Source: Podarcis muralis (Eukaryota). Taken from it: a stretch of DNA of 64,000 nt. Shown one piece after another: positions 3,075-53,687 of the stretch. The stretch lies in contig NC_135667.1 in the NCBI RefSeq assembly GCF_964188315.1, positions 25,854,001-25,918,000 on the forward strand. The letters run 5' to 3'. A program made the position numbers and the translations under genes. Positions within the stretch are counted from its first letter, which is position 1. Every line of letters begins with the position of its first letter. Under the pieces are notes generated by a model that did not search any database, was not told the DNA's origin, and saw only the letters and a program-made list of their open reading frames with translations.

Positions 3075-3870
3075 CCCCCTGTCTTGTTGTGATTCAATTT
3101 TGATCCATTAACTGCCAGACTTGCCAGAGTGTCAGGCCTAATATGCACAGCAGCTCATCCCTACAGGTCTTGTCCCATGAATCAGTTGCCAAGACTGAAA
3201 GTCTCGCCACAGCCATCTAAGTTCCCTCCTCTCCAGGGATTTTTCCAAGCAATCAGAGCCTGAGCCTGTGTGAAGCCAACATCTTCTACACCCTATTCAT
3301 ACCTCTACTCATTCTGGGAGACTAGCAGGGAGAGGAGCTTGTCACAGCAGGAGGGGGAGACACCCATGACCATGCACAAGCCTGATTCATCTCTGCCTCT
3401 TGGCCTCTGTCCTCCCCTGCTGCACTTCCCGAGCTTTGAGCCTTCTTCCCTTGGTGGTTCTCCAGCTAGTTCCTCCCATTCTCTGTGCCCAACCAGTCCA
3501 TGGCAGGTAGAAAGATGAAAAAGTTGGCTGAATGCCATAGAGATGGAGCCCCTCACCTTTCATCAGGAAGTACATTCAATAACATCAGTGCATTCCATAA
3601 CACCAGTGCTACCAACTGAAAAATCTTGATGAGTTCAAAGAAATGTTGAAGAACATTGCGGGGGGGGGGGGGATAGTACCTTGCAGCACCCCAATGCTGA
3701 TCTTCTGATCTACAGTATGTGCAAACATATTTTTGTGGTAACTTTAGCTTCCCCACATCTGGCATCATGGTGTCATGCTTCCCATGCCATGGAAGTGGAA
3801 GTGGTGGGCCAAATGAAGACACTTTTTAGGCTGAAATCATGTTATAAAGAAAACACTGGAAGGAACTGAT
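3075..3870 (-). mobile_element. Ancient degraded L2 RT relic (predates the duplication)
   Basis: Minus-strand remnants QGTI..AMFFNISLNS (~GVPQGSILSPMLFNIYM) and AVNGSKLNHNKT (~LKLNPDKTE). Also present in the duplicate at about 8850-9215. Confidence 0.5.
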
Positions 3871-4123
3871 ACATACTGATACTATTATAGCGATGCAGAT
3901 CCCGTTTCAGCTCAAGAACCACATTCCCTTCTAAGCTTCACAAATGATCTTTTGCTATGGGGGTTCAGCTATGAAACCCAATGAGAGATCTTACAGTTTG
4001 ACCCACTTGCAAGCCAGGCTTCACAGAAGATGATTACATAGTGCTGGTTTCCCAAAACATCATATAAGGACAAACGTGACTCAAAGGTTCACCACTTGCA
4101 AAGCGTCATCTGATTCAGTTGAT

Positions 4124-4440: not shown

Positions 4441-5472
4441 TGGAGTGATACCTCTTTATGAAGAATGGATATAGTTTATAGTTTATAGTGTAATATCCAC
4501 TGAATATTACAACGTAGTTCTGAAACTCAATAGCTCCTAGAACAGAGAATATTTATTGATGGCAAGCAATGTGTGCTAAAAAAGGAAGGGGGGCCTGCCA
4601 AATCAATAGATTCAGTAAAGGGTTAGAATTTGAGCAAACTCATAAATACAAGAATTTTGCAAGGGCTGGAAAGAACACCAGTTAGCTTCCTCATGAGTAG
4701 AGTTGCCACCTTTGTTCTGGCAAAATACAGACCAGGATTGGGTAGTGATTTCCCCACCCACCCACCCACCCGATGCTGGAATGACTTCAAAGCAATCCAT
4801 TACAATGACATACATGGTTTACCGTGTTTTATTCAATGGAAAAACATAGCAAAAGCACTGTTTACAAGTATAAGAAAAATATTGCATATTGCATGTATAG
4901 CTTGGCTTGTAATGCTAGCTGGTTTGACACAAACCAGGATGAAACATCACAATGACGATGTATATCCCAATTCAGTGGAAACTATCAGGAAATGTTCCAA
5001 CAATGATATTGAAAGGAAACAAAAGCAAAAAACCTATTTGTTTTGGCTGAAGGTTTTAGTCAGAATGTCACTTTGTGTTGAGTCAATAATCTCTCCCTCT
5101 CTCTCCTTGGCCCACCATGAGGATATTTTGTCAATCCTTGCCACATTAAACAAATAATTCAGTGGAAATTGACACAGGACAGATGAAAGTTGACTGAAAT
5201 TAGATCATCACTTTTTATCAGTTCCTCAGAGCACCAGTTCTGAATATCAGCACAACCATTCCCCATCGCAGAGAAGATCCTCTCCATGCCCCCTAGAATA
5301 CTCAGAATGTCAGAAACAGCATAGTAGGTAGATCAGATGTCTTAAAATACAACCACCCATCTTGCACCCACTCCTTTTCTCTTGGCTGGGAGCAGAGCAA
5401 GTATGAGCTCCTCTGCGGGAGCCTGCCCATTCACAAGGTCATTTTAAGGCATATTTTGGCTAATAGTGCAAA

Positions 5473-11220: not shown

Positions 11221-11827
11221 CCAAAATATTATCATTATTATCAACATTAGCATTATCATAATTGCTGGTGAGTGTTTGGTGCTGTACAAATGCTGAAAAT
11301 GTCATAGTAAGGCTTCATGGCAGGGGCACACATTCTGTGGTTGACCTCAGTTACCAATATGTCTTGGGCCGGCGCTGCTACCTGCCTATTTCAACTTTGC
11401 AATTCTGGATGGCATCCCCTTGGGGATCATTTTGGATCACTGAGTTTGTGGCATGATACTAATGAGGTGTCACAGGAAAGGTCTTCGTATTGCCTATAGT
11501 GTCACTATGTATGAATATGCATCCAAAACAGAGAGAATAAAGTTCAAGATGTGATGATGAGTCAGCCACTGCCCATCATGACAGAATATCAGAATCTTTT
11601 TTTTTTAAAAAAAGTTAGTTCATCCAAAAGTTAGTTCTCATGGGTGTATGGCATTCTTTTTATTACTCATCCCCCAAATGCTACAAAGAGAACCCATGGA
11701 ACAAGAACCAAAGGGAGAGCCAAAGGAAACAACATCCACAGCACTTTCATAATATAACACTTGGCCAAAGCTACACTGTGCCATGGAAATCTTACCTGAA
11801 GTATATTGCTCCTTATTCTCCTCATTC

Positions 11828-11874
<47 letters not shown>

Positions 11875-11993
11875 TTTAGCTGCTCAGGGCGGCTAACACC
11901 AAATATAAATTACAATAAAACATAATAGAAAACAACAACAAGTAAGTAAAATACGGCTTAAAATACAGATTAAAATGCAGCCTCATTTTAGTA
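11828..11993 (-). mobile_element. (ATA)n tail plus very short L2 3' tip
   Basis: About 15 ATA units followed by gctcagggcggctaacacc, matching the 3' end of the L2 at 12848-12868. Confidence 0.6.
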
Positions 11994-12357
11994 AAAGGTA
12001 AAGGGACCCCTGACCATTAGGTCCAGTCGTGACCGACTCTGGGGTTGCGGCGCTCATCTCGCTCTATGGGCTGAGGGAGCCAGTGTTTGTCCGCAGACAG
12101 CTTCCGGGTCATGTGGTCAGCATGACTAAGCTGCTTCTGGCGAACCAGAGCAGTGCACGGAAACGCCGTTTACCTTCCCACCAGAGCGGTTCCTATTTAT
12201 CTACTTACACTTTGACGTGCTTTCGAACTGCTAGGTTGGCAGGAGCTGGGACCGAGCAACGGGAGCTCACCCCGTCGCGGGGATTTGAACTGCCGACCTT
12301 CTGATCGGCAAGTCCTCGGCTCTGTGGTTTAACCCACAGCACCACCTGCGTCCCCTG
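11994..12357 (-). mobile_element. Full-length Sauria SINE with 12-bp TSD
   Basis: tRNA-derived head, BovB-like body and ACCTTT tail. TSD ctcattttagta at 11982-11993 and 12358-12369. Confidence 0.92.
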
Positions 12358-12759
12358 CTCATTTTAGTAGTAGCCCATAAATCAAGACCATAAAGAGAGG
12401 AAACATCAGATATTCACCCGAGCCTGCTATCCACATGGGCCAGCAAAAAAGCCAAGGGAAAATTTATATACCAAATCCCATATAAGGGGTCAGAGTGAGT
12501 CTAAGCCAAAGGCCAGGCCAAAAGTTGTTTGGAGGAAGCCCATGACTCCCAACTGAGTCAATGTGGATGTTTAATGGAAATACATTTAAAGTGTTGTATT
12601 TTAAAAAATAAAATACATTATACGCCTTCATTACACACCTTTAGGCACCAGGCAAGAGCATTCCTTTTTAACCAGGCCTTTGGTTGATCTTATTGACACC
12701 CAACACCCTTTTAGAATGTGGCTTTTTTTTGGGGGGGGAGGGTTATTGGGTTAAAGCTC

Positions 12760-12813
<54 letters not shown>

Positions 12814-15225
12814 TTTATTTATATCCCGCCCTCCCCAGCCGAAGCCGGGCTCAGGGCGGCTAACAACACTAAAACAGTACAACATTATAAATACATTCTA
12901 AAAATTAATTAAAATACAAATTGATGGCAACCATAGACTAAAGCTTTGTAGAGATTGCCAAAGGAGGGAGTCAGGCTGCGCCCTGACCAAAGGCCTGGTG
13001 GAACAGCTCTGTCTTGCAGGCCCTCCGGAAAGATGTCAAGTCCTGCAGGGCCCTTGTCTCTTGCGACAGAGCGTTCCACCAGGTTGGAGCCGCAACCGAA
13101 AAAGCTCTGGCTCTAGTTGAGGCCAGCCTAACCTCTCTGTGGCCTGGGACCTTCAAGATGTTTTTATTTGAAGACCGTAAGTTCCTCTGTGGGGCATACC
13201 AGGAGAGGCGGTCCCGTAGGTACGAGGGTCCTAGGCCGTATAGGGCTTTAAAGGTTAAAACCAGCACCTTAAACCTGATCCTGTACTCCACCGGGAGCCA
13301 GTGCAGCTGGTATAGCACCGGATGAATGTGATCTCGCAGCGAAGACCCCGTAAGGAGTCTCGCTGCAGCATTCTGCACCCGCTGGAGTTTCTGAGTCAGT
13401 CTCAAGGGCAGCCCCACGTAGAGCGAGTTACAATAATCCAGTCTGGAGGTGACCGTCGCGTGGATCACAGTGGCTAGGTCAGGGCGAGAGAGGTAAGGAG
13501 CCAACTGCTTAGCTTGGCGGAGATGAAAAAATGCCGCCTTTGTTATAGCTGCAATCTGCGCCTCCATGGAGAGGGAGGTATCGAAGATTACACCCAAACT
13601 CTTAACGGACGGTGCTGGCACTAATTGCACCCCCTCAAGAGAAGGGAGTTGCCCCCTCAATCTCATATCGTCCCGTCCCAGCCAGAGGACCTCTGTCTTC
13701 GAAGGATTTAACTTCAACCGGCTCCCACGTAACCGTCCAGCCACAGCTTCCAAGCATCTGATCAGTGTGTCTGGGGCCGAGTGAGGATGGCCATCCATCA
13801 ACAGATAGAGTTGGGTGTCATCAGCATACTGATGGCAGCCCAGCCCAAAACTCCGGACAAGCTGGGCAAGGGGGCGCATAAAGATGTTAAAAAGCATCGG
13901 GGAGAGAATCGCACCCTGAGGCACTCCACACACCAAGGAGTGGCGGGATGACAATTCCCCCCCAAGCGCCACCCTCTGTCCCCGACCAGAGAGAAACGAG
14001 CGCAGCCATTGAAGGGCTGTGCCCTGGATCCCCACGTCGGCAAGGCGGTGGTCCAGGAGTTCGTGATCGACCATGTCGAAGGCTGCTGACAGGTCTAGAA
14101 GAATCAGCAGCCCCGACCCGCCTCGATCCAGCTGCCTACGGAGATCATCTGTTAAGGCGACCAGAGCAGTCTCGGTCCCATGACCAGCGCAGAAGCCGGA
14201 CTGGAATGGATCCAGAGCCGATGTTTCATCCAGAAACCTACCAAGCTGTTCCGCAACCGCTCTCTCAATCACCTTACCCAGGAATGGAAGATTCGAAACC
14301 GGGCGGTAATTGGATAGATCTAGGGATCTAATGATGTTTTCTTTAAAAGCGGGCACACCACTGCCTCCTTCAGTTCCCCTGGGAATGTCCCGGTGCCAAG
14401 GGACAAATTGATGATATCCCCCAGGGGGGCCCGCACCTCGTCTGGACACGCTCTAATCAGCCAGGACGGGCACGGGTCGAGAGGACAAGTGGTGGGCTTT
14501 CCAGCTCGGAGGAGTCTGTCCACATCGGCTGGGGATATCCGGTCAAAGTGGTCCAATACTGGACCCGAGGACAGTCGAGGGGCCTCCAGTTCCTTTATTG
14601 TATCGAAATTGGCGGGGAGGTCATGGCGGAGCAACAGGACCTTCTCCGCAAAAAAGCTCGCAAATGCCTCACAGCTGTGTGTCCAATTGTTATTTAAATT
14701 TGGCTGTCCTTCGAGGGACGTTAAAGACCGAATTATACTAAATAATTGCGCCGGGCGAGAGCTAGCGGATGCAGTGGAGGCCGAGAAGTAGGACTTCTTA
14801 GCGGCCTTCACTGCCATCTCATAGGTTTTCATAAAAACTCTATAGGATGTTCTTGAAGCTCCGTCACGGGCACCCCGCCATACTCGCTCTAGCCGTCTGA
14901 GGTCCCGCTTCATTTTCCGGAGCTCCTCGGTAAACCAGGGAGCCCGGTTTCTGCGGGGTCGCAGAGGGCGCTTAGGTGCGATCTCATTGATGGCTGCCAG
15001 GAGCTGGGTATTCCAGCCCTCAACAAGCTCAGTCAATGAGTCACCAGGGGGAGCAAGGTCCCGCAAGGCTTGACGGAATCTATCAGGGTCCATCAGCCTC
15101 CGCGGGCGAGCCCAAATCGGCTCGCCACCCAAGCAGGGTGGGGGTGGAACGTCAATCCTGGCTTTCAGAGCGTAGTGATCAGACCATGGCACCTTCATCG
15201 AAGGAAACATGATCACATCTTGGTT
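12760..15225 (-). mobile_element. Young 5'-truncated L2 LINE (end of APE plus RT) with one frameshift
   Basis: ORF 14320-15315 (PWSDH endonuclease end, CPLDPCP) and ORF 12971-14449 (DLSAAFD, GVPQGAILSP, QYADD) join if 1 nt is restored near 14322 (KTSLDPLDLSNYRP). (TAA)n tail at 12760-12811; CpG-rich. Confidence 0.93.
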
Positions 15226-15337
15226 TGATTTTATATGTTGTGATCTTGTGAATCGCCCTGAGACCTCCAGGTATAGGGCAGTGTAAAAGTTGAAATAATA
15301 ATAACCGCTCTCCACATCAAATGGGGGGAGGAGCCTT

Positions 15338-15774
15338 TTGTGTGGTCACACACAGCCCCCCCTCCCGGTCCCATGCGGCTCCTGGCAGTGCAGCCTGGCT
15401 CCCCCCCCCGACTGGACACCTGGAGGTAGCTGCCTACCTCTGCCAGTTACCCAATCCCAGCTGGGGAGGCGTTGCCAGGAGAGAGTTGGTCAGGTAAAGG
15501 GAGGGATCAACCTGCCCACACAACAGTGGGTGGAACTTACCCGGGAATTCTCGGTTGGCTTCAGAGCTTCTCCCACCCTGCCCTCCCTCAGTTAAGCCTT
15601 CTTTTGCAGGTTAACCTCTTCTTCACAGGTACACGGGCACTGCTACGTTATGGTCACTGTTGAAGGGCCGGAAAGGAATTTTCCTGCATTGGCAGGTTTT
15701 GCCTTCCCTGTAGCAAAATGTCACAACTTTGGCAGTTTCAGGCCTTGGGTGGAATCTTGTAGTCTATCTTCCCT

Positions 15775-15809
<35 letters not shown>

Positions 15810-16192
15810 GCAGTGACCCACGCCCCCCCCTGCAGCGGTGATCCCAGGGTTCCCCGTTAAAGGGGTTGTTTTGAGGGGAGGCATTGGCCATATGCTAATA
15901 GGTTGTCATTGTTCTCCCCTGCGATGGCAGTGAAATGGGGGGCGGGCTCTCTGCTTGAACAGAAGTTCTCCAGAGCCAGCCCAATCCCCACACATTCTGA
16001 ATAACCCTGATGCTCTCCAGATCCCCTGCCGGGGACTGGGAGGGATAAGTACCCAATGCCTAAGCCAAGGTCTCCCTACATCTGAAGCTTTAATAAAGAT
16101 TTGGCCAAATTTTAATCCCATAACACGTTTTCTTGAGTCATTATTCCACTCGGGTGTCGCCTGGGGTTGGGAGGTCTCCACCTGTCTGTGCA

Positions 16193-16193
<1 letters not shown>
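15338..16193 (+). mobile_element. Short ORF-less Ngaro-related element (promoter-like left part plus polyA right part)
   Basis: Ends TTG...CAA. Contains ccaatgcctaagcc (16053) and aataaagatttggcc (16092), matching the right end of the element at 34938-34988. Internal (TG)n at 15777-15806. Confidence 0.6.
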
Positions 16194-16234
<41 letters not shown>

Positions 16235-16328
16235 TACAGTTTATTTATCATTTCTTCCTCTGCCACAACCATAAACTATCTCAGGGAGTGCAAGATTCAC
16301 ATCAAAATTGTTTGACAGAAGAATTTGA

Positions 16329-16835
16329 TTATTGAAGTATATACACTTTTTTGTTCCTCTTAGGTCTGAGTACAATAATGTAGCATTTTGGGGGAAAGAT
16401 AAAAACCAGCAAAGCAGAGCTAGAAGCCAAAATGACAAAAATTTCCACAGCTACTATAAATTTCCTCTTGCTGCTCAAATATGTAGGCACAAAAGACATC
16501 CAAACACAGCAAAATATCAGCATGCTGAAGGTTATGAATTTGGTGTCGTTAAAACCATCAGGCAATTTCCTGGCCAGGAAAGCAACTGTGAAGCTGACAA
16601 TGGCCAGAAAACCCATGTAGCCTAGTACAATGTAGAAAATGGATACAGATCCTTCATTACATACAAGCATGATTTGACCATGCATGGATGTCTTGTCCAC
16701 ATCTGGAAATGAAGGATATATTCCAAGCCAGACGCAACTAATGCCAACCTGAACAAGGGAACAGAAGACACCAATGAGTTTGCCAGTCTTTTTCCTAACC
16801 ATTTCCGCATATGATTCCCTGGATTTCTAGCCATA
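16329..16835 (-). pseudogene. V2R pseudogene fragment (3' half of the 7TM exon)
   Basis: [27 protein letters not shown] and [10 protein letters not shown] motifs. Frameshift near 16770 ([12 protein letters not shown] in another frame). No upstream exons. Confidence 0.9.
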
Positions 16836-17063
16836 TGAAGATGAAGATCAGAATAAGTGATTCTTATTTCTCCAGTCCTGGTGTCTGTCAGGCAAACCTG
16901 ATTAAACCAAGCTCTTGTGAGATTTTAAGAAATGGGTGAAAGAGGAGAAGGGTTATCTAAAAACTGTGGCAGGAAGCTTACAGTGGCCCGGTTTAGCAAC
17001 TATCCTTGTTGAACTCACCAGCTAAGTTTGCTATTACAGGGAGTTGGGCTACAGGTGTGTGTT

Positions 17064-17103
<40 letters not shown>

Positions 17104-18759
17104 CGCGCACAGTGTGGAAGAATGAGTGAGATATATTTTTTGAGTCTTTTGTGGTCTAGTGGTCCCCCAACTGAAGGAAACCAAAATCCTATAGCGTTAT
17201 CTCCAAAACCTTTGAGATTTCAAATAAATACAATGAAATCTGAATATCATATCCCCTATGGGATTGTTGATTGCTTATTCACCTGCTAGCTTCAGTCTTC
17301 AAAATTACACTCCATTTTGCCTTCCCACCACGGGAATATTTGTTGTGTTATTGTATCATCCTTGCTGTCTCAAGTGGTTCGTGGTTTCATTGTAATCAGT
17401 GACTGGATAAAGTATTTACTTCCACAGTGATATATAGAGTCAATATGATTACAGGAGGGTGTTTATTCTTCAGGTGAATCTTGATGCTACACTGCAGTAT
17501 TTGGGAATTTCTCTTGCTCTTCTAATTTTGCACTTAGCAAGTCTTTATCCCTTTCTTTACTTCCCAGTTTTTCACCATCAAAGAGAGGAGAAACTGAGCC
17601 TCACAGGTACATAATGGGGAATAACTTTGTATGGGAAAGAGAAGAAGTTCTCTTGCAGTTAAGCTCACTTTCACAAGTTATGGTGGTGGTCACCAACTTG
17701 GATCGCTTTAATAGAGGATAAGAAAAAAATCATGGTGAATAATGGCTACTAGCCACAATGCCTATGTTCTACCTCCACTGCTGGTGGTGGTATGTCTCTA
17801 AATGCCAGTTGTTTGGAATCACAAGTGAGGAGAGAGCTGTTATATGGTCCTGCTTGTGGGCTTTCTGTATGCATCTGGTTGGCCTCTATTAGAAAAAGCT
17901 GCTAAACTAGATGACTTTTTGTCTGATGTTGGATTAGATGGTTTTGTCTGATGTTGGATTAGAAGTATTCTCCTGTCACATCCTTATGGTCCAGGGAGGA
18001 GAAGGAGATCCAGGAAGGAGATTCAGGAAATCTGGAATAGATAGGGTAGTCTCCCACCCCATCCATCTGATCCAGAATGCTTGATGGGCCTTTGGTCTGA
18101 TCCAGTAAGGCTCATCTTATGTTCTTAATAGACTTTCTGTTAAGGATGACCACCAACACCACAATCTAGCATTTAAGCCTGCAGAGGTGAGCTAACAATT
18201 CTTATTAAAGATTCCCCCCCCCCCTAAAAATCACTTGAATTTTTGTTGTTGCTGTTGTTGAGCACCTCTAGTGCTGTTTCAGTCCTCACCTGGAGAATAC
18301 TGCGCAAAATAGTTGCCCTTCCCATTTTACATTACAAATATTTTAATATCGTTACACAAGTCAAAGCCTTTGCCACCTCCTACTCCTTCCATTCTGTCTT
18401 AGTTCATTGCTTCCTTTATCCACAGATATGATAAGAGAAAATTCTGCCTCAGTGCTTTCATTTTGGCAAACACATATTTACAGCATCTATTCTCTGGCCT
18501 GTGAAGATTTCTTGCATTTGTTGGCCACAAATGAAAGGGAGGGTTGTTAGATTTATGTGCTCCACTTTCTCCCACACGAACTCTATGAAATAGGCTAGGC
18601 TTGCCCAATGGCCATTGTGTCAACTTCATAGCTATCACAGTAGGGAACATGTCTGGCCTTGTAGTATCTGAGACCAACATTTTTTACTAGGGCTATCTGA
18701 AACATTCTGAGATTTTGTTTCCAACCCCTTAACACAAATCAGCTGTTTTGCCACAGGAT

Positions 18760-24618: not shown

Positions 24619-24907
24619 CATGTCTTCCTGTTTGCAGAGGCCGATAGGTGAAATGTGAGAGCAATAGTTCAAATGTGAGGCTGTACAGTGATATCGCATC
24701 TTCTTTGGATGCAGGGGGTCTCAGATTCAATCACCAGTATCTTCAGGTAGGGCTGAGAGAGAATCCTACCTGAACAGAGTGGCTATGGATTATAGACTAT
24801 GACCCCAAGATTTCACTTCTGGTCAGTTCCAGCCAGCATTCAGCATGAATGAGTGCATATGTGAAGTTAGGACTCTCTCCACCCTGCAATGTGCATCACA
24901 TTACACT

Positions 24908-25321
24908 TTGTTTGGTGGCCTGGCTAGGGGGCAGGGGATTGAGGCACCCCTCAAGCCATCCCCTGGCCATGTCACACTACACGGCCAATCAATGCTGGCA
25001 GGGTGTATGGCCATGGGTGTTTTAAACCGCAGCACAGTTGGGGCGCTAGGGCCATGCCATGACCCCAAGGGGTACCGCTCAGGGTGGCCCTATTTGATGT
25101 CAGTCATAGGGCTTCCCCTTCTGGTGTTTTAACATTAGTTTGACTCTCTGCAGACAGGCGGGAGTCAAGATATAGTTGGGCTTCATCCAATGCCTAAGCC
25201 AAACCACTCACATCTGTAACCAATAAAGTTATGGCCTGTTTTAGCCCATTAACCTACATACTCGTGTCTGTGTGTTTATTAATCAATAGGTAACTGTGGG
25301 GCACAGGGCTTTGGCACACAA
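24908..25321 (+). mobile_element. 414-bp ORF-less Ngaro-related element
   Basis: TTG...CAA ends. CCAAT and TTTTAAA in the left half. ccaatgcctaagcc (25187) and aataaagttatggcc (25222) match 34938-34988. Confidence 0.65.
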
Positions 25322-26350: not shown

Positions 26351-27255
26351 TCATGTTCTTTTTTTGCCAATTAGTTGTTCTCTGGTGTTCAACTCAGGTC
26401 TGAATATAATAATGTAGCATTTTGGGGAAAAGATACAACCCAGTAATCCAGCACCAGAGGACAAGATGGAAAAGATCTCCACAGCTACCATGTATTTTCC
26501 TTTGGTGCTCAGATAGGTGGGAACAAAGGACAACCAAACACTACAAAACACCAGCAGGCTGAAAGTGATAAATTTGGCCTCATTGAAACTGTCAGGTAAC
26601 TTCCTGGCCAGGAAAGCCAAGATGAAGCTGACAATGGCCAGCAAACCCATATAGACTAAGACACCATAAAACATGGCCACTGAACCCTCATTACATTCAA
26701 GTATGATTTCCCCATGCAGTGAGTGCATATCCATATCTGGGAATGGAGGGGATGTACTTAACCAAAGAGTACCTATGCAAGCCTGAATACAGGAGCAGAA
26801 AAGGACAATAGAATTTGCCAGCCTTTTCCCTATCCATTTCCTCATACTTGATCCTGGTTTGGTTGCCATGAATGCCAGAAGCACAGTAATGGTTTTTGCC
26901 AAAACACTGGAAAGGGCCACAGAAAAGATGATGCTAAAAGTGATTTGTCGGAGAAGGCAGGTGACCTTTTGAGGCTGTCCAATGAAGAGAAAGGAGCAGA
27001 GGAAACAAAGCAGGAGAGAGATGAGGAGAATGTAGGTCAGAGTCCGATTGTTGGCTTTGACTATGGGAGTATTATTGTGCTTCATAAAAGTCCCAAGGAT
27101 GAATGTTGTGACCAGAGAGAAAGAAATAGTCAAGATAACTAAGATAAGCCCTAAATCTTCTTCATAAGAGAGGTAGCTTGGGACCTTGGGAATGCATTGG
27201 GTTTGGTCATGGTTGGGATACTCATCTTCTGGACATTTCACACAGGCAGCCATAT
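26351..27255 (-). CDS. V2R exon 6 (7TM)
   Basis: Acceptor ttttatttcag|at. [45 protein letters not shown]. Confidence 0.95.
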
Positions 27256-30200
27256 CTGAAATAAAAGAGGAGCTGTTTAAATATTGCAGATACTGACCAA
27301 TGTACAGCTAAAGCATTGGTTCTTAACTTTTTGGGAGGCACGTCACAGAACTTTTATATAATCTCCTCATAAAAATATCCACATAAAGACATAAACAGCG
27401 AATTTTGCATTCAATTTATATTCAAAATTCCCTTTTTTCACATAGACAGAATCTAAAAACCGTCTACAATGTTTCATGTTATTTCATGCAGCTGTAAAAC
27501 ATTGGGTTGCTCTGTTATGCTGACAATTTATTTTGCCCGTTGTTTGAAATATTATTCCTAAATTAATGATGACAGAAACTGTATTGCAAGATTATCAAAG
27601 GGGAGAAACAATGATGGTGAATGTATCCTGAAATGTTGGTGATATTATCACCATGTTGTATAATATAAACTTGAAGGCTGGGATTCAACCAGGCTTTTGA
27701 GTGTTCTTGAGGAATGAATGTTTCACAAAGCCATTTCCGAGCCTCGGGAGGAGAGGGTGTTGCGGGCTGGCCCCTCCCACAAGCGCGGGGGCTGGAGCTT
27801 AGCCCCCGCGAGAGCAAGGGAATCCCCGGGGGCGTGCCTCTCCGCCTTCCCCCTGTCCGCCAATCGGCGGGCGGGGGAGGTGTGGCCTGCGCTATTTAAG
27901 GCCAGGCACGCCCCGGGATCGCCCTCTTCACTCCTCAGCAGCAGAGAAGTTTTGTTTTCAGCTGATCGCTTCAGGGATCCCCCCCTTTTTTTTTTACCTC
28001 GTGCAGCGTGCGGGAAGCCCTTCGGAGCGCTCCTTCGTGCACCCTTGAGAGAGGCATCGCAGCAACCGCCGTAGCTTGGACCGCGTGGGGTCCGTTTTTT
28101 CTACCAACCCGCTTGCGGTTATTCGCCAAAAAGAGCTGAAATACATAGGGGGGTTTCGGGGGGGCTTATTCTCGTAGGTTGCGCAGCCACGCTCTCGGCA
28201 GTCAACGGTAGTAGTAGACGAAGGAAAGGAGCGCCGCCGCCCGTGCGCGATTCGCGCGCTCCGGATAGCTTCCCCTTCGTGGCTTCGTTGCCTTTGTCGA
28301 GGGTCGCCTGCCGCTGCTTACCGCCGAACAGCTGGTCGCCTTCCGCGCCGCCTTCCTCCCGCGTCGTTCCCCCGTCACCACTCGGAACAGGTCGTATTGT
28401 GTTTTGCTTTTGGGGATCTGTATATTTTGTTTTTTCGTGCTAGGTTTGGTGGTATCGTGAAACCTTGCTTGCGGGAGTCTGCGTGTCGCCGTTAGTTGCT
28501 TTCCCCACGCTACGAGCCCCCACCCCTTTTCGGTGTCTCCTCATCCTCCCTCCTATTGCTGCGGTCTTTCGTTCCCTGATTCTGTGAATAGCGCAAAGCG
28601 TTCTCTGCTGCTGCTTTGCTTTGCGTCCCCCTGATCCTGTGTCTATCTCTCGTTGCGAAGCTCCTCCGCAGCGCGCCCACAATTGATATAGTATATTGGC
28701 CACGGGCTGCTGCAAAAATTTAGATTTAGTTTCGGGAGGTTTCTGGGTTCCGCAAAGCAGCTTTTACGAGGAGATTGGGTGGCGTTGCTAAGCAACAAGA
28801 TTGCTTTCAGCGCCATTTTGAATTGACCACGTGGCTCTGGGGCGGCAGCCATTTTGGGAGAGGCACGCCGCATTAGGATAGCGTTCAACGCCATTTTGTT
28901 TTGCCCACGTGGCTCCGGAGCGGCAGCCATTTTGGGAGAGGCAGGCTGCATTAGGATAGCGTTCGACGCCATTTTGTTTTGACCACGTGGCTCAGGGGCG
29001 GCAGCCATTTTGGGAGGGGCAAAAGCCGGTTAGGAAGGAAGCCTTCCGGGTGGCATTAACAAAATTGTAGGCACACTTAGCACAGTGGGGGGATAGGAAG
29101 AGGAGGCCCGGTAGTCAAGCTTAGGTACAACCAACTCATCTAGGAGGCTTGCAATTTAACAACGTTGTTCCCAAACCCCACCCCACCCCCAATTTTTTGC
29201 GGATTCTGCTGGCATCATCATTTCGTAATTAAAGTGCATAGTGCCCGGCTTTGAGGGCTTGCCTATGAGAAACTCAGTTAAGTGACGTGCTTCATTTAGT
29301 AGTTAATTATAGTGAATCTTTCCGCAGTAATTCATTCCTTAAGGTACGCAGAGCCAGTTAAGTGACGTGCTTCATTTAGTAGTTAATTATAGTTAATTAT
29401 AGTGAATCTTTCCGCAGTAATTCATTCCTTAAGGTACGCAGAGCCAAGTTTCTATTTAATTGGATTAGCCGGGCAAGGCAATTACTTGGTAACTGAATTA
29501 TTTACATAGGTACCGGATTAGCAGCCTCACCGCCATAATTCCCCTCCGCTTTAATGCTTGGCAATAAATTTTTGAGATAGACTTGAAGTTATCCATCTGG
29601 GCACAGCTCCTGCTGTTCTCCCATTTGTGCTCCATTTCAGGTTCAAGTTAAGTATAAGCAAGCGGATCTAGTGGAAGAGGCGGGTGGTGTGAAGTCAACT
29701 GTTTTTATATATGCATTTTAATACTTATTAAGCGTTGTTAAATAAATAAATAAGTAGATAAATATATATTAATAAAAAATAAAATAAAAAATTGTTTTAA
29801 TTATTAACTAATCAAGAATTAACTAATTAAACTAAAATAAAATTAATAGTTAGTTAAAAAAATAAATAAAAAATAAATAAATAAATAGGGGGTCTAATCG
29901 CCTTGCTAGATCTTTCGGTACTGTTAGGTACAGTTGATATTGCAATGGCTTCCGGAGGCGAGCAACAGCCTTCCACCTCCGGCAATCAGTCAGCAGCTGC
30001 AGCAAGTAGCGGGGGTGCACAGATGGTGTCCATGTCTTGCAATCCCCAAGCGTTTGACCAGCTTTTCAGGGCATTTGAATCTTTTTATAGACAGTGTAGG
30101 CCCGGGCCCGGGGCACCTCCGGCTCCAGAGCAGTCGCAGGACGTTATTCCCGACACACCACCAGCCAATCAAGGACAGCAGGGCATACCTCTCGCGGCAG

Positions 30201-33200
30201 TAGCCAGTGCCCAGCCTGGGACACCAACCGCAAGCCGCCCCAATACACGTGCCCAGTCCGTGCTAGCCAGGAAGGCAGTGCAAGGTGGTAGCAAAGGCAA
30301 GGCACCCGCGAAACATGGCGGCAAAGGGAAGACTCCGGCTAAGGGGGCCAATGTCATACCCCTCTCACAAACATCAGGTATTCCGAGTGTTTTCCAGAAA
30401 CAGCAGCCTCTGCATAGCTCCACCGAGGACAGCGCAGGTTCTGGGTCCGACGAGGACCGGGTGGAACCCCAACCACCTCAGCCGGTTGCCGAGACCAGCG
30501 CAGCTGCCGCAGACACTCAAGGGGGTAAGAGGAAGTCAAAGAAGAAGCACATCTCCGCAAAAAAGAAGAGGAGCAAGCAATCGGATACGGAAGAGGACAC
30601 AGGTACGTCTTCTTCAGACTCTGATGATGAGGCCCTTATGGATGGGTACTGGGGTCAAGGGGGAAATAATCACGGGATCCCTTTGTGGGCACATGAGCGG
30701 AGGGCAAATTCCCATAGGAAGACCTTCAGTGGGGTGCTGGAGTGGAAGGATGGGGCTCTGGTGGAAGATGTAAAGGTCGCCACCAATCAGCCCACGGATT
30801 TCATATTGGGGAACCATTTGTCGCAGAAAAAGAGAAATAAGATTCTTAATGGAGACTATGTAGACATGTTCACCCTCCTCCCTCCAGCCAAATTAATGGA
30901 AAAAGGTGAAAAGAGGCGCTCTTACGGTAAGAGGAGGTATAGAACACCTAGGGCGGAGCGCAATTTCGAAAACTGGTTAGATGGTTACCAGATTTTCATG
31001 GGAGTTGTGTGCGCTGCCTATCCCCGACGCTCCATGGACTTGGTAGCTTACATGGCTCACGTGAGGAGGGCTCGTGCGCTCGCGGGTGAAAATGCTGCAT
31101 TGACATATGATGAGAATTTCCGTAGAAATGCGTCTCTGCTCCCTGCTACCCGATGGGACCTTACTGATCCAAACTACTGGGGAGAAGATGTAAATCCATA
31201 CATTGATAAGAAAAACCTGGATACGGCCAGAGTTGGTAAGACCGAGGTGAAACGCCGGCGCCAGTGTTGGGAGTTTAACAGGGGCGTTTGCTCCCGTCCC
31301 TTATGTAAGTACCTACATGAGTGCGAACGTTGCTGGGGTAACCACCCCGCTTCTGCCTGCTTTAAAGGTAAGCAGCAGCCCTTTCGTGGGGGCAGGGGGT
31401 ACTTCAACGGCAACGCCAGGGGTGCCCCCGGATCCTCCCACCAGGGACCAGGTAACCGCCTGTAACACCGGCACAGTAACGTTAGTGGCGCCCACGGATC
31501 TGCCCATCTCGGAACAGTTAACCCCCAGTAATCTTGACCTCGGTTTGGCTTTTTCCCCTATCCGCCTGCAGCCTTTAAAATCCCTCTTAGAGATATACCC
31601 TGAGCGGAAAGCCGCGCAATATCTTTGGGAAGGCTTCTCCAAAGGTTTCCGAATCCCGGTAGCAGTTCCCCCCAATTCCAGGGAGCCTCAAAATCAAAAA
31701 TCAGTTAGGGAGAGGCCGGATATAGCTAGGAAAAAGATAGAGAAGGAAATCAGGGCGGGGAGAGTGGCAGGTCCCTTTGATGAGCCTCCCTTTGAGGGTC
31801 TTCACTTATCTCCTCTGGGTATAGTACCAAAGAAGGCTCCTGGAGAATTCCGGATGATTCATAACCTGTCCTACCCTAGGGGTGCCTCAGTCAACGACGC
31901 AATCCCCCAGGAGCTTTGCTCAGTTAAATACGCTTCATTTGATCAAGCGGTAAAAATGATTCGTAGATTTGGGCAAGGGGCATCACTGGCAAAATGCGAC
32001 ATCGAGTCGGCCTTCCGCCTTCTCCCGGTACGTCCAGATGACTTCCGGTGGTTGGGCTTCAAATTTGAGGGGGCTTATTTCATTGACAAGGTGATGCCCA
32101 TGGGCTGCTCCGTCGCTTGCGCAGCCTTCGAGTCATTCAGTACATTTTTGGATTGGGCCCTACGCCATAGGACAGGGTCGTCGGGCGTGTCGCATTACCT
32201 CGATGATTTTATCCTGGCCGCTGATAGCAGACCTCGATGCTCTGCTCTCCTCAAGGCCTTCACAGACTTAGCGGGGGAATTGGGGGTACCGCTGGCCGCG
32301 GACAAAACTGAGGGCCCGGCCACTAGCATGGTGTATTTGGGTATTGAGCTAGATACTGTGGCACAGACCTCCAGGTTGCCAAAGGATAAGCTCTTGGCGC
32401 TTAAGGCAATGATTCTGCAGCTACTGCCCCTAAGGAAAGTCACCCTACGACAAATTCAATCCCTCTTAGGACACCTAAATTTTGCATGTAGGGTGGTGGC
32501 GCCGGGGCTCCCCTTTTGTAACCGCTTGGCCAGACTGTCGGCAGGTCTTAAGGCGCCACAGCACAGGGTACGCCTATCCAAGGAGGTTAAAGCAGACTTA
32601 GGCGTCTGGTTGCAATTCCTAGAAAAGTACAACGGTATATCCTTATGGCAAGACTCCATGGCACTCAACACCGACTTCCAAGTGCAGTCGGATGCCGCAG
32701 GGTCGCTGGGTTTTGGAGTTTACTTTAAAGGCCAATGGTGTGCCAGAAAGTGGCCCACGGAATGGAGAGGACAGCCCATTACTCGGGACCTTACATTCTT
32801 GGAATTTTTTCCAATAGTAGTGGCAGTACACCTCTGGGCAGAACAGTTCAGCAATCATAGGGTTTGCTTCAATACAGACAATCAAGCAGTGGTGGCGGTC
32901 CTGGCCAGACAATCTGTGCGCTCCACCAGAGTAGGGAACCTATTGCGAGCCTTTGTTCTTCTGTGTCTGGAACGGAACATATACTTTTCGGCCAAATTTG
33001 TACCTGGCGTTAATAATGACATCGCGGATGCTCTGTCTCTTTTTCAGATGGAGCGCTTTCGCTCATTAGCGCCGGATGCGGAGCAATCATCGATGCCTTT
33101 CCCGGAGCATCTCTGGAGGATTGGGAGAGAGAAGTAATGAAGGGAGTATTCGGTGCTGTGGCCCCGTCCACGATGCGTTCATACAAGAAGGCTTGGGCCG

Positions 33201-36200
33201 ATTTCCTAATTTTCCGCAGTAAAGCACCAGGCGCTAGGCCCTATGCTGCCCCTTCAACAAGAGAGGTCCTCCACTACCTGGCTCACCTGAAGGAGTTAGG
33301 CAGGGCCCCTAAGACCCTCAATATCCAGTCGGCAGGGATATCTTATTTCTGTAAAGCCTTTTTCACGACCGACCCGTGCGCGGCTTTTATCGTACGCAAA
33401 ACTCTTGAGGGTTGGCGCAGGCAGCACCCCCCTAGTGCAGATGGGAGGCGGCCTTTAACGTATGACATCTTGTCCCAGATTCACAAGGCATTACGTACGG
33501 TATGCTGGTCTAAGTATGAAGCGCGCCTATTCTCGGCTGCGTTCTCGATATCCTTTTTCGGCGCCCTACGCATAGGAGAGGTCGTCTGTGAAGGGGGAGT
33601 TACCCATGCTCAGAGGGGCATCTTATTAAGTGACATAACCCTGTCACGGTCGGACCTAATCATCCGGGTCCGGAGCTCAAAGACAGACCAGCAGGGAAAA
33701 GGGGCCCTACTTCGCCTTCCAGCAGCTCAGGACAAGGGGCCCTGCCCAGTTAGGGACGCGAGACGCTTTCTATACCTAAGACCCAAGAACCCTGGACCCT
33801 TGTTTATTCATGCAGACGGGTCGCGACTGGCTAGGCAGCAATTCACCCGGGTAATGCGTATGGCTTTGACGGCATGTGGTTTGCCTGCGGCAGAGTTTGC
33901 GGCACACTCCTTCCGTATTGGTGCGGCCACCACCGCGGTGCATCTGGGGCTCTCCACCGAGAGGATCAAGGAAATGGGGAGGTGGAGATCTAATGCTTAT
34001 AAAACTTATGTCAGAAATAACGTATGACTAGGAAGAATACCACTGAACTCTCTTTCCCTGTCTGCTTGCTTTCCAGGAACTAGAAGGTTGTGCATTTGGT
34101 TGGTGGGCCACAGTATAGTACATTGGGCCAAGAATCGGGCCATGAGTACAGGACTGGGGCAAAATCTGAAGTTGCCTGCGAATGTGGAGCTGGCGTGGCT
34201 AGCGCGGAGAGGGATGCGCTGGAGTGAGTTTAAGCCAGCAGTGATGGCGAGAGCTGCCTCAGAGGGGCCCCCTGATGCATTGGTGATTCAGTTGGGAGAA
34301 AACGATCTCGCATATCGCAAGGCGATTGATCTCAGATGGAACATTTTTGATGACCTGTCCGAACTGGTGACAGTGTACCCAAACATCAAAATACTGTGGT
34401 CCTCGTTGCTTGAGAGGAGGACTTGGAGGGACTGTGCGAGTCCAGTTGGTGTGAATAAAGCGAGGAAAGTTTTAGAGCGGGCAGTGGAACGTAGAGTGGT
34501 GGCCTTGGGCGGGTGGATCATTCGACATCCACATATACAGTTCAGCAACGAGGCCCTCTACAGGCGGGATGGCGTGCATTTGTCCGATGCTGGGAACGAT
34601 ATATGGTTGGGGGACATCATAGTAGGTATTAGAGGTTGGTTACAGGCCTGAAGGTATTGGCGGCGAGCTACGCTCGAGTGGCGGTTAGGCATTGGCAGGG
34701 GTCTATTGTTATGCAAATGGATGGGGGGAAGGACACGCCATCACCTTCCCACGAGAAAAAGGGTAGTCCGGTAGAGGACTCCGGGGGCGTTGCCTTGTCC
34801 GAGACCTAGTAAGGTGAGGGCCGCCGGCACGCCCACGAGCGGTGACACCCGTGGGGGTCCTAGTTGGCGTACTCCAACGGGACACCCACGGTTCGTGTTC
34901 AACCCTTCCCGGTTACCATGCCGGGTAGTGATAGGAGCCAATGCCTAAGGCCAATACCTTCAATTCTGTAATCAATAAAGTTGTGGCCATTTACGCCCAT
35001 TAACCTTAAATAATGTGTCTTGTGTCTTTATTTCATATGGGGGAGGGAACTTGCCACGCAATGAGTTCTCACATCTGATACTGGAAATGCAGAAAGTAGA
35101 AATGTCCTTTATTATTTATTTATTTAAAAAATTTTCCCTGTTCTTCATTGTTAATCTAATTTCAAAGTAAAAAAATATGTTGTGATAAGATTCTATTTTT
35201 TTAAAAAATGTAACTAAATGTAACTAAAAACAAAATATATTCTTGAAATGCTAGACGGTCAAGAAGGAAAAGGGTCTTCTGGATACCATATTGAAACTTC
35301 ACATATCAAGATTGGAAAGATATAGGAAAGTCTTTTTCATTAACTGTGGAACTACCTGACAGGTTGCTTTGACTGACAGATAGTGATGGACACAAATTCA
35401 GCCAGTGCCATACTCTTTAAAACTCTTAAAATATAATAGTTAGGGATTTATTTTTTGTTTACAATTTTTCATTGCAAACTACCGTCCTATGCATTCAAAG
35501 GGTTACACTTTATGTTTTGTCATGGAAATGCAAATAAGATAGTTGTGTCCATTATTCCTCCCACCTTTATACTTGGAGACCATTCCTTCTGGACATGGAG
35601 CACAATCATAGCAGCAAAATTTCTCTCCCTCCTTCTTTTTCTTGCTGTAGCCAGGATAGCAGCAGTCATTGCACACAGAAATGGGTAGCACCTGTACAGA
35701 ATCAATAAAGAAAGGGTAATAGATCACTGAAAAAAGGAGGTTGGGAGAAGAAACGGAAGCTCCAGGTTAGAGCTGGGAGAGTTCACTTTTCTCTGTCTTG
35801 TCAAGTTAAGATTTACTTGTGGAAGAGGACTTTTTGTGCTTCTCTCTCACACACACTTTTGCTCTCATTTAGGTTAGGTTTTTTATTGTATTCTTTTATA
35901 TCCCTCAGCTGCCGTGGGAAAACCAGGAAATCCCATTTTGTCACACACGAGCACAGCGGCCATTTTAGGCATTGAGATCTCACCCTTTAAAAAGTGCTTT
36001 TTCAGGGCCACGATCTCACGCAGATCATGTGACTCACATGGGAGCACGGCCCTGGAAGGTGGCATCCTAGTTTTATAGTGTGTTGAGGGGTATGTTGTAT
36101 TAATAAAAGGGAGAAAAGGAGATTGTTTCAGTTGCTGAGGAACTGAGAGGTTGGGCATTAGATTTTGTTCTACTCACATAAATGTACATTTTGCATTGGA

Positions 36201-51597: not shown

Positions 51598-52671
51598 AAA
51601 TGGGTCTGAACTGTTGGAAAGGAGGCAATGGTGTGGTGTTCCACACCCAATTTGTATAACTCAAGCAAGAAAGAAGGTGAACTGTGCAGTGAAATGCAAA
51701 GTCGAGTTATTGGGTGGATTCTTGATTTGGCACCCCAATATCACCTTTGATAAAGAGGTGTCAGGGACTGGACTGAGGGGGATGAGACTGAGGAGGAATG
51801 GTGGAGACTGCCCCCCCCCCCTTCTCCTGAAGCAGTGGTTTGAGGAAGGTCACAGCTCAGAGACACGTGAACAGAAGAGTTGGGAGGTTTTGGGAGAAGA
51901 GAAGGGTGAGACAGAGACACATTATCACAGAACAGCATTTCTGACCCCCCTTCCTTCTCCCAGAACCTGGCATGCATTGAAAGTGGAAGAGCAAAGGACT
52001 CAGAGACAATTAGACCCTGGCGACCACTGTAAGGTGAAGTGCTGTTGCTAGGAAGGGAGGGGACAGGAGCTCAGTTGGAGCAACACCATTAACCTAAGTG
52101 GTAGTGTACAGAGGCCTCTTGCCATGAATATTGAATAAAGACTCAGTAAGAGCTTCCTTGTCTACTTCCTTGGCTGTCTACTGTGAGACGGGAAAGGATC
52201 AGAATTCACTGAAACCTGACAAGAGGCCGCATTTAGACATAATGGTAGTTGGCTCAGATGGACAGTTTAGGTTGGCCCTACTCTTGTTTTAGGGGGGTTG
52301 TAAGCTTCTGCCTGACACTCCAAAGGAAATGGGTATCCCATTAAAGGGATCTGGGAGGAGGTGCTACTCTTCAGACACCTAGGCATGGGCTAGGGCCATA
52401 GCACTCCTTAAGACAGTTCTCCTGTGGGGATGACCCATTTGGATGTACTGTATGCTACAGGTCCTCCTCGTCTCAGGAGCAACCCCTTTTGGAAATACTT
52501 CCAGCAGCTGGGCTGGGTGTTAATGGTTATACCCAGTGTGTTTGCCAAACCTATTACATCTGTAAATAATAAAAGTTGTGGCCTTATTTGACCCCCAAAA
52601 TTATTATTGTGTATTGATTGGTTCTTTTCCTAAATCAGGGGACATTAGGGTAGTGGTGGTGCCTGGGCACA
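51598..52671 (+). mobile_element. Degenerate Ngaro-like 3' relic (SGNH C-terminal half plus right end)
   Basis: LLERRQWCGVPHPICITQARKKVNCAVKCKVELLGGFLIWHPNITF aligns with ORF4 LLERRTW...KARK...[13 protein letters not shown]. It resumes after the LTR as EAAFRHNG (~EALYRRDG). aataaaagttgtggcc near 52568. Confidence 0.75.
51759..52221 (+). mobile_element. Gypsy-type solo LTR, 463 bp, with 5-bp TSD
   Basis: tgtcagg...cctgaca perfect 7-bp inverted ends; agagg at 51754-51758 and 52222-52226; AATAAA near 52134. Confidence 0.88.
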
Positions 52672-53687
52672 TGAGAAAATCTGTACGCAGCTTCCAAGGT
52701 GCAAATACAATTACATTATGATGGATTCTGTACTCAAGAATGTGGGCCTTATAAAATAATATTCTAAAAATAAAATTGGTCATTAAAAACAGCTTGGCAG
52801 AATTTACTGATTCTACAAATTGTGTTCTCAAAAACACAATTTATATTCTCAAAGGCACACAGTGTTTATTTTCTCAAAACCAAGAGATTTATAGACTCTA
52901 TTCCCACATGAAGAGGTACTAAATTAATGAATGTAGCTGATTTCCCCAATGACAGCCAACAATCTTTAACAAGCTGGGCACATGTTGCATACTAAGTCTT
53001 AGGCTTACACATTCACGTGGGGTCACACAGCAATCAGAGTGTATTTCTTTTGTCTCCTTTAAATACTTCCTTCATACCACTTAGCATCAGTTTCATGTTC
53101 AATCATCTAAGGGGAAAGCGAACTCATCAAGGTAGGCACCGTCTGCAGCTTGAAAGAACACACTATATAGCTGGATGTTAATATAGCAATTTATGTTCAT
53201 CCAAAAGAACACAATAGAAAAATGAAATGCTCATGATGATAAAGTAAAGCAAAGGGTTGAAACCGGTGCTAGTGCTAGTAAGATAAGACCATTTGAAGTT
53301 AATGAACATAACTTGGGTTCAGTAATTTAAATGGGTGTTTCCTGCAACTCGAATAACTGAATTGGCAAACATTAATCTTGACCAATGCTATCTGTAACTA
53401 TTCTTTGTCCAAATGTGGATTTCAGATGATCCTGAAAGAGTCATACTGGAAGGAGAACACAGGTACAATTTTGCTGTAGTTATTTATGTAATGATATGCT
53501 AAAATGTGAGTGTCTATTTCTGGGGGTAGGAGGGAATGGCTCTGCGACTGGGATGGCGATAAAGTTGTCCCTGATTTGACCAAAAATACTGTTTTTTGAC
53601 TGTTATTCATCAGACAGGTTTGAGGGTTGTGCGACACCTGGGCACGCAAGTAATGATTATGGTTGAAGGAAAACTAAAATCATTTCC

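What the first reader, a model, noticed from the sequence alone, without database searches (positions are those of the whole stretch)
27760..35061. Ngaro-type coding set without split direct repeats; ends join into a lox/att-like near-palindrome
Established: Ngaro elements have A1-ORFs-B1-A2-B2 repeats, and DIRS1 elements have long ITRs plus an ICR. Seen: I find no second copy of either end here. The ends are ttgcgggctggcccctccc and gggagggaacttgccacgcaa, which are imperfect inverted repeats. Circularised, they give gggagggaacttgccacgcaa|ttgcgggctggcccctccc, centred on gcaattgc. Two relics also end TTG...CAA. Inference: these are the YR binding arms. The copy is either a B1xB2 recombinant or belongs to a lineage with a third terminal architecture.
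Basis: partly seen in the sequence, partly recalled or inferred. Interest (0 to 1): 0.72.

Follow-up and report, generated by a model that had tools for sequence, protein, structure and literature searches.

The report
Ngaro copy missing its 3' repeats
This is a wall-lizard Ngaro-type jumping gene with all four genes intact that has lost the internal repeat block its closest relatives still carry, so it is an ordinary deletion derivative and not a new way of building the ends of such elements.

Summary
The coding set is Ngaro-type: gag with a CCCH finger, RT/RH, tyrosine recombinase and SGNH hydrolase. This copy has no second copy of either end. The 3' end at 35061 is right: six other, independent 3' ends stop at the same ...CAC(G/A)CAA.

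The 5' end is set 31-34 nt too far in. Homology with three other 5' ends and with an internal B1|A2 junction starts at CAAAGCC (27726), not at TTGCGG (27760). The proposed joint "gcaa|ttgc" therefore does not exist.

The two inverted arms are real and far beyond chance. They are separated by about 31 nt that form a hairpin of their own. The whole two-tier hairpin is kept, with different sequences, in five diverged copies, and it is always more stable on the plus strand.

Three relatives (L003, L007, L009) have canonical A1-ORFs-B1-A2-x-B2 repeats that are 99.5-100% identical. They include the window's sister on the tree. The window's ends are homologous to their A and B, and only A2-x-B is missing.

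Single-B and split-repeat copies are interspersed on the tree, so the loss is recurrent and not a lineage trait.

The scan reached the same verdict earlier on another copy of this genome.

The parts
27726..27728 (+). CAA shared by the 5' edge and the 3' end: the probable crossover core, one copy coming from the target and one from the element.
   Evidence: CAA precedes AGCC at three independent 5' ends (window, L003, L005) and is also the last three bases of B. L007 and L009 share only AA. DIRS-type elements are known to be flanked by a junction tri- or dinucleotide (PMC7192593, PMC9210276).
27729..27953 (+). Repeat A, single copy here. It holds the junction-proximal hairpin half, a CCAAT box (27860-27864), a TATA-like TATTTAA (27893-27899) and about 30 nt past the predicted transcription start.
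   Evidence: L003 A (223 nt, repeated at 100%) aligns to window 27726-27953 at 76.5%; see also alignment A1. The promoter motifs are read from the sequence. The start site is inferred, not measured.
27729..27759 (+). 31-nt spacer between the inverted arms. It folds into an inner hairpin of about 10 bp.
   Evidence: Fold of the composite junction. The same inner hairpin (9-11 bp) is found in L003, L005, L007 and L009.
27760..27781 (+). A-side arm of the junction hairpin.
   Evidence: It pairs with 35038-35061.
27954..29944 (+). Long 5' untranslated region with tandem repeats (78 nt x3 at 28792-29025; about 80-90 nt x2 at 29275-29446) and an AT-rich tract.
29945..31465 (+). gag-like ORF with a C-terminal CCCH zinc finger.
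   Evidence: weak zf-CCCH_10 hit; the CCCH motif is visible in the translation.
31317..33137 (+). RT/RNase H ORF, with no methyltransferase domain.
   Evidence: PF00078, E = 2e-14.
33137..34027 (+). Tyrosine recombinase ORF.
   Evidence: PF00589 and PF13495, both below Pfam's own cut-offs. 730 homologues, many of them named integrase/recombinase XerD homolog in lizards.
34088..34651 (+). SGNH/GDSL hydrolase ORF.
   Evidence: PF13472, E = 5.8e-4. This is a known extra ORF of vertebrate Ngaro elements (PMC9210276).
34679..35061 (+). Repeat B, single copy here. It holds AATAAA (34974-34979), a GU-rich tract and the B-side hairpin arm (35038-35061), and ends in CAA.
   Evidence: L003 B (387 nt, repeated at 100%) aligns to 34679-35061 at 84.9%; see also alignment A2.

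Best explanation
The element spans 27726/27729-35061. It is a copy of a canonical split-direct-repeat Ngaro family of lacertid lizards (Podarcis muralis genome) that has the form A-ORFs-B. It lacks the block A2-x-B that its relatives carry at the 3' end.

The most likely origin is homologous recombination between the two B repeats (about 360-410 bp, about 400 bp apart) after insertion. This is the counterpart of solo-LTR formation.

In complete copies the internal B1|A2 joint holds, side by side, the two terminal stretches that the transcript lacks. The transcript is predicted to start about 30 nt before the end of A and to end soon after the AATAAA in B. The joint therefore plays the part of the DIRS-1 internal complementary region: it is the template for restoring the ends and forming the circle junction. 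That joint folds into a conserved two-tier hairpin whose outer stem ends exactly at ...CAA|, where the recombinase is inferred to cross over with a target (C)AA.

This copy has no such joint. It can still make its four proteins, but it is predicted to be unable to restore its own ends, so it is a dead end for transposition in cis.

Shown: the anatomy, the homology, the repeats in relatives, and the conservation of the hairpin. Inferred: the timing of the deletion, the transcript ends, the crossover at CAA, and the immobility.
For: - Relatives with split repeats. L003: A1 4967-5189 = A2 12078-12300 and B1 11695-12081 = B2 12470-12856, both 100%. L007: A 223 nt at 100%, B 359 nt at 99.7%. L009 (Lacerta agilis): A 218 nt and B 414 nt, both 99.5%.
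- The window's ends are homologous to L003's A (76.5%) and B (84.9%). The 169-nt x segment has no match in the window.
- The window is sister to L003 on the YR+SGNH tree (97% SH-aLRT). L007 (split repeats) is sister to L008 (single B).
- Six of nine 3' ends are single-B, so the loss is frequent.
- The junction hairpin has the same geometry in 5 of 5 copies. Duplex energy is -19.8 to -22.7 kcal/mol against -8.5 to -11.2 in shuffles; 0-3 of 500 shuffles reach it.
- Literature: Xenopus Ngaro copies often lack part or all of their split repeats (PMC9210276). Solo AB repeats occur in Cafeteria (PMC8547959). Removing the ICR abolishes DIRS-1 retrotransposition (PMC7192593).
Against: - No copy of the window's own subfamily was found. 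The closest YR is 82% identical and the closest relative with known ends is about 76% identical in DNA. The split-repeat ancestor is therefore inferred from a sister subfamily.
- All four ORFs are intact and most sampled copies are single-B. This fits a loss at or before insertion about as well as a later deletion.
Confidence: 0.55

Rival explanations
1. The copy derives from the same family, but the loss happened before insertion. Either the replication intermediate closed on B1 instead of B2, or a circle with two B|A junctions was resolved by the element's recombinase or by homologous recombination. Resolution gives an A-ORFs-B circle and an A-x-B minicircle. The single-junction circle then integrated normally at a CAA.
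For: Six of nine sampled 3' ends are single-B, and all nine single-B or split-repeat loci keep open YR and SGNH frames. This suggests the form arises quickly. Both ends of the window copy are complete and carry the CAA signature. An A-x-B relic lies upstream in L009 at 3619-3905, and solo AB units are known elsewhere (PMC8547959). These would be the reciprocal products.
Against: The product is identical in sequence to that of a post-insertion B1xB2 deletion, so nothing in the window tells them apart. Solo A-x-B units also arise by A1xA2 recombination in the chromosome. No circles have been observed.
Confidence: 0.3
2. The element belongs to a lineage with a third terminal architecture: short terminal inverted repeats that join into a lox/att-like site, with no internal junction copy needed.
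For: This copy, L005 and four copies that lack a 5' end show no A2. The inverted arms are real.
Against: The 5' boundary on which the lox-like joint rests is wrong. The ends are homologous to the A and B of split-repeat elements. The sister copy has split repeats, and the two forms are interspersed on the tree. The arms lie 28-32 nt apart. Without a junction copy, the predicted transcript cannot carry the terminal about 200 nt of A or about 60 nt of B.
Confidence: 0.05
3. Assembly artefact: the real locus has B1-A2-x-B2, and the assembler collapsed the two B copies.
For: B repeats are identical in young copies, and collapse of short repeats can happen.
Against: The same assembly (GCA_964188315.1) resolves the split repeats of L003 and L007 with 100% identical copies. 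The block is under 1 kb.
Confidence: 0.03

Closest known systems
Ngaro retrotransposons (DIRS order; Goodwin & Poulter 2004), for example Xenopus tropicalis DIRS-53_XT with an SGNH ORF
   Same: The gene order is gag, RT/RH, YR and SGNH hydrolase, with no methyltransferase. Relatives have A1-ORFs-B1A2B2 repeats of similar size (Xenopus: A 236 bp, B 152 bp, 100% identical; PMC9210276). Copies that have lost part or all of their split repeats are reported there too.
   Different: This copy has only one A and one B. The lizard family has a conserved segment x of about 170 nt between A2 and B2.
Solo LTRs and solo AB repeats of Cafeteria Ngaro elements (PMC8547959)
   Same: Recombination between direct repeats of one element removes what lies between them.
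   Different: Here the recombining pair is B1/B2, so the coding part stays and only the junction block goes. The product is A-ORFs-B, not a solo AB.
DIRS-1 internal complementary region and circle junction (Cappello 1985; Malicki 2020, PMC7192593)
   Same: An internal stretch holds both termini side by side and is needed to restore the ends. A short tri- or dinucleotide at the junction is found at both flanks of insertions. The junction is self-complementary.
   Different: DIRS-1 has inverted terminal repeats plus an ICR. Here the repeats are direct, and the self-complementary part is a two-tier hairpin across B|A.
loxP/FRT/att core sites of tyrosine recombinases
   Same: Inverted arms lie near the crossover point.
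   Different: The arms are 28-32 nt apart, not 6-8 bp. The crossover lies at the end of one arm, not midway. The arm sequences differ between subfamilies while staying complementary. The fold is asymmetric between strands.

Membership tests
Ngaro (YR retrotransposons, DIRS order) | Encodes a tyrosine recombinase instead of a DDE integrase or endonuclease | tested here: met
   PF00589 (E = 8.2e-5) and PF13495, both below Pfam's cut-offs. 730 homologues, many named integrase/recombinase XerD homolog.
Ngaro (YR retrotransposons, DIRS order) | gag, RT/RH and YR in this order on one strand | tested here: met
   ORFs 29945-31465, 31317-33137 and 33137-34027, all on the + strand.
Ngaro (YR retrotransposons, DIRS order) | No methyltransferase domain (this separates Ngaro from DIRS1-like and PAT-like elements) | tested here: met
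   No methyltransferase family at E <= 0.1 in any ORF. A very diverged domain cannot be excluded from Pfam alone.
Ngaro (YR retrotransposons, DIRS order) | Split direct repeats A1-[ORFs]-B1A2B2 | tested here: not met
   Not met in this copy. Met in the homologous relatives L003, L007 and L009. The family qualifies; this copy is a derivative of it.
Ngaro (YR retrotransposons, DIRS order) | SGNH hydrolase ORF after YR (vertebrate Ngaro elements) | tested here: met
   PF13472, E = 5.8e-4, below the cut-off. Conserved in eight of the nine fetched loci; L001 ends right after YR. See PMC9210276.
Ngaro (YR retrotransposons, DIRS order) | RT/YR groups with reference Ngaro sequences in a phylogeny | not tested
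   No reference Ngaro, DIRS or PAT sequences were at hand. Only lizard copies were placed on the tree.
DIRS1-like | Long inverted terminal repeats plus an internal complementary region | tested here: not met
   No long inverted repeats between the ends. The arms are about 22-24 nt.
lox/att-like YR core site | Two inverted binding arms around a 6-8 bp crossover spacer at the circle junction | tested here: not met
   With the corrected 5' end the arms are 31 nt apart (28-32 nt in four other copies), and the junction lies at the end of the B arm.

The most novel reading that the evidence does not exclude
Single-B copies such as this one, together with solo A-x-B units, are regular primary products of Ngaro replication: the two outcomes of resolving, or alternatively closing, an intermediate that has two B|A junctions. 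The conserved plus-strand two-tier hairpin across B|A would then be the structure read by the element's machinery. If so, a large share of new Ngaro insertions are born unable to transpose again.
Probability: 0.25. Interest if true: 0.45.

Novelty: new member of a known kind. Interest (0 to 1): 0.2.

Why it matters
As proposed (a third terminal architecture with a lox-like joint), the finding would have changed how YR retrotransposons are classified. The evidence shows instead a routine deletion derivative of a canonical Ngaro element.

Three things remain useful:
- Exact ends for this lizard family: (C)AA|AGCC ... CACGCAA|.
- A conserved two-tier hairpin across the B|A joint, plus a conserved x segment. 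Both are candidate cis-acting signals in a group whose replication has never been worked out by experiment.
- The observation that single-B copies outnumber complete ones among the sampled copies.

Tried and rejected
1. Reads. There is therefore no test for an empty site, no copy number, and no evidence on transcript start or poly(A) site.
2. An exact-protein look-up of the window's YR found nothing.
3. L001, the closest YR at 82%, is cut off right after YR and has an unrelated 5' region, so its ends could not be scored.
4. A plain MAFFT alignment of the five junctions gave no RNAalifold consensus. The stems were then compared from each sequence's own fold.
5. A motif hit at window 44851 that looked like an A start is part of an unrelated repeat that looks like a tRNA-derived SINE.
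6. Poly(A) masking at B1 by the hairpin was considered and dropped. The hairpin arm begins about 60 nt after AATAAA, beyond the GU-rich tract.
7. The second large protein search was not spent on hunting for same-subfamily copies. The verdict does not rest on their absence.
Full report
**What is there.** The stretch holds four intact ORFs on the + strand:
- a gag-like protein with a CCCH finger (29945-31465);
- RT/RNase H (31317-33137; PF00078, E = 2e-14);
- a tyrosine recombinase (33137-34027; PF00589 and PF13495, both below Pfam's cut-offs);
- an SGNH/GDSL hydrolase (34088-34651; PF13472).

No methyltransferase domain was found. This is the coding set of vertebrate Ngaro elements as described for Xenopus (PMC9210276). 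The recombinase's relatives name the genome: Podarcis muralis, with further kin in Lacerta, Zootoca, geckos and anoles.

**The observation.** Self-BLAST of 27500-35300 and the repeat finder show no second copy of either end. They find only tandem repeats in the 5' untranslated region. That part of the finding holds.

**The ends.** I fetched nine related loci through annotated recombinase homologues.

Six other, independent 3' ends lose homology at the same base as the window, directly after CAC(G/A)CAA. They are L002, L003 B2, L004, L005, L006 and a relic at window 25321. A further relic ends the same way at 53649. The 3' end at 35061 is therefore correct.

The 5' end is not. Homology with the 5' ends of L003 and L005, and with the internal B1|A2 joint of L003, begins at CAAAGCC, window 27726. 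L003's A repeat aligns to 27726-27953 from its very first base.

The trinucleotide CAA stands at the 5' edge and at the 3' end in the window, L003 and L005. L007 and L009 share only AA. [quoted passage not shown]

**The relatives have split direct repeats.**
- L003: A1 4967-5189 = A2 12078-12300 (223 nt) and B1 11695-12081 = B2 12470-12856 (387 nt), both 100% identical.
- L007: A 223 nt at 100% and B 359 nt at 99.7%.
- L009, from Lacerta agilis: A 218 nt and B 414 nt, both 99.5%.

The window's ends are homologous to L003's A (76.5%) and B (84.9%).

Between A2 and B2 these three copies hold a segment x of about 170 nt. It is 77-80% conserved between them, and it is absent from the window and from every single-B copy. 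The window therefore differs from a canonical copy by exactly the block A2-x-B.

**Is it a lineage trait?** On a tree of YR+SGNH the window is sister to L003, which has split repeats (97% SH-aLRT). L007 (split repeats) is sister to L008 (single B). The two forms are interspersed.

Of nine scorable 3' ends, three have split repeats and six are single-B. The loss is recurrent and frequent, not the mark of a separate architecture. The same has been reported for Xenopus Ngaro copies (PMC9210276), and the reciprocal solo AB units for Cafeteria (PMC8547959).

**The inverted arms.** They are real. The last 24 nt of B (35038-35061) pair with 27760-27781. Duplex energy is -19.8 kcal/mol against -8.5 +/- 2.2 in shuffles, and 0 of 500 shuffles reach it.

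With the corrected end, 31 nt (27729-27759) lie between the arms, and these form an inner hairpin of about 10 bp.

The same two-tier hairpin is found in all five junctions I could build. Three are real B1|A2 joints and two are composites. The outer stem has 18-24 bp, the B arm ends 0-1 nt from the joint, the A arm starts 28-32 nt after it, and the inner stem has 9-11 bp.

The arm sequences differ between subfamilies but stay complementary. For example, CGCAA/TTGCG becomes CACAA/TTGTG in L007, and the distal parts are wholly different.

Folded as RNA, the plus strand is 4-17 kcal/mol more stable than the minus strand in 5 of 5 copies, with 2-6 G:U pairs. This favours a hairpin in plus-strand RNA (or plus-strand DNA) over two protein-binding arms in duplex DNA. 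Five related sequences are a small sample, however.

**How it most likely works.** In a complete copy, transcription is predicted to start about 25-30 nt after TATTTAA (27893-27899), near the end of A. It is predicted to end soon after the AATAAA in B2 (window equivalent 34974-34979). The RNA then lacks about 200 nt of A and about 60 nt of B. Both are present side by side in the internal B1|A2 joint. This joint is the functional counterpart of the DIRS-1 ICR, which has been shown to be essential (PMC7192593).

The window copy has no such joint and no x. It can express its proteins but should not be able to restore its ends. These steps are inferred from sequence and from the DIRS-1 model; nothing here was measured.

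**Origin of the deletion.** Homologous recombination between B1 and B2 after insertion is the simplest route. An origin before insertion gives the same sequence and cannot be excluded. It could come from closing the intermediate on B1, or from resolving a circle that has two junctions. The high share of single-B copies with open reading frames keeps this second possibility alive.

**Limits.**
There is therefore no empty-site, copy-number or transcript evidence.
- The element's words occur in 20 public runs from six studies. This shows only that the sequence is widespread in the species.
- No copy of the window's own subfamily was found.
- Earlier notes of this scan reached the same verdict for another copy (s1-175902) and described the junction hairpin (s1-152619). 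I reached both points again from my own loci.

Noticed in passing
L003:12301-12469, L007:13939-14115, L009:12178-12351: A segment x of about 170 nt between A2 and B2 is 77-80% conserved across subfamilies whose recombinases are only about 58-77% identical to the window's. It is missing from all single-B copies and is probably a cis-acting signal.
   Followed up: partly
window 26351-27253 (-): A 300-aa ORF is a 7tm_3 domain (E = 1e-84), the transmembrane exon of a V2R-type receptor gene. The element lies about 470 bp from it on the opposite strand, probably in that gene's last intron.
   Followed up: partly
window 24849-25321, 53540-53649, 51605-52583, 16051-16113: Old fragments of Ngaro 3' regions (SGNH and B tail). 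Two of them end in CAC(A/G)CAA like the intact copy.
   Followed up: partly
window 34636-34661 with 34950-34975: A 26-nt inverted repeat (85% complementary) closes a domain of about 290 nt, running from the hydrolase stop codon to just before AATAAA. This is a long-range stem in the 3' untranslated region.
   Followed up: no
L005:1-4867 and 13316-17415: The single-B Ngaro copy of L005 is flanked by direct repeats of about 4 kb (92-99% identical). It sits inside a larger duplicated unit or another element.
   Followed up: no
window 28792-29025 and 29275-29446; L001:9003-9490: The 2-kb 5' untranslated region carries tandem repeats (78 nt x3; about 80-90 nt x2). L001 has different tandem repeats (about 132 nt) in the same position.
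   Followed up: no
L001-L009: The YR frame, and the SGNH frame where present, are free of stop codons in all nine fetched loci, even in copies whose gag/RT part is missing or not detected (L002, L004, L006-L008) and in L006, whose YR is split by inserted DNA.
   Followed up: no
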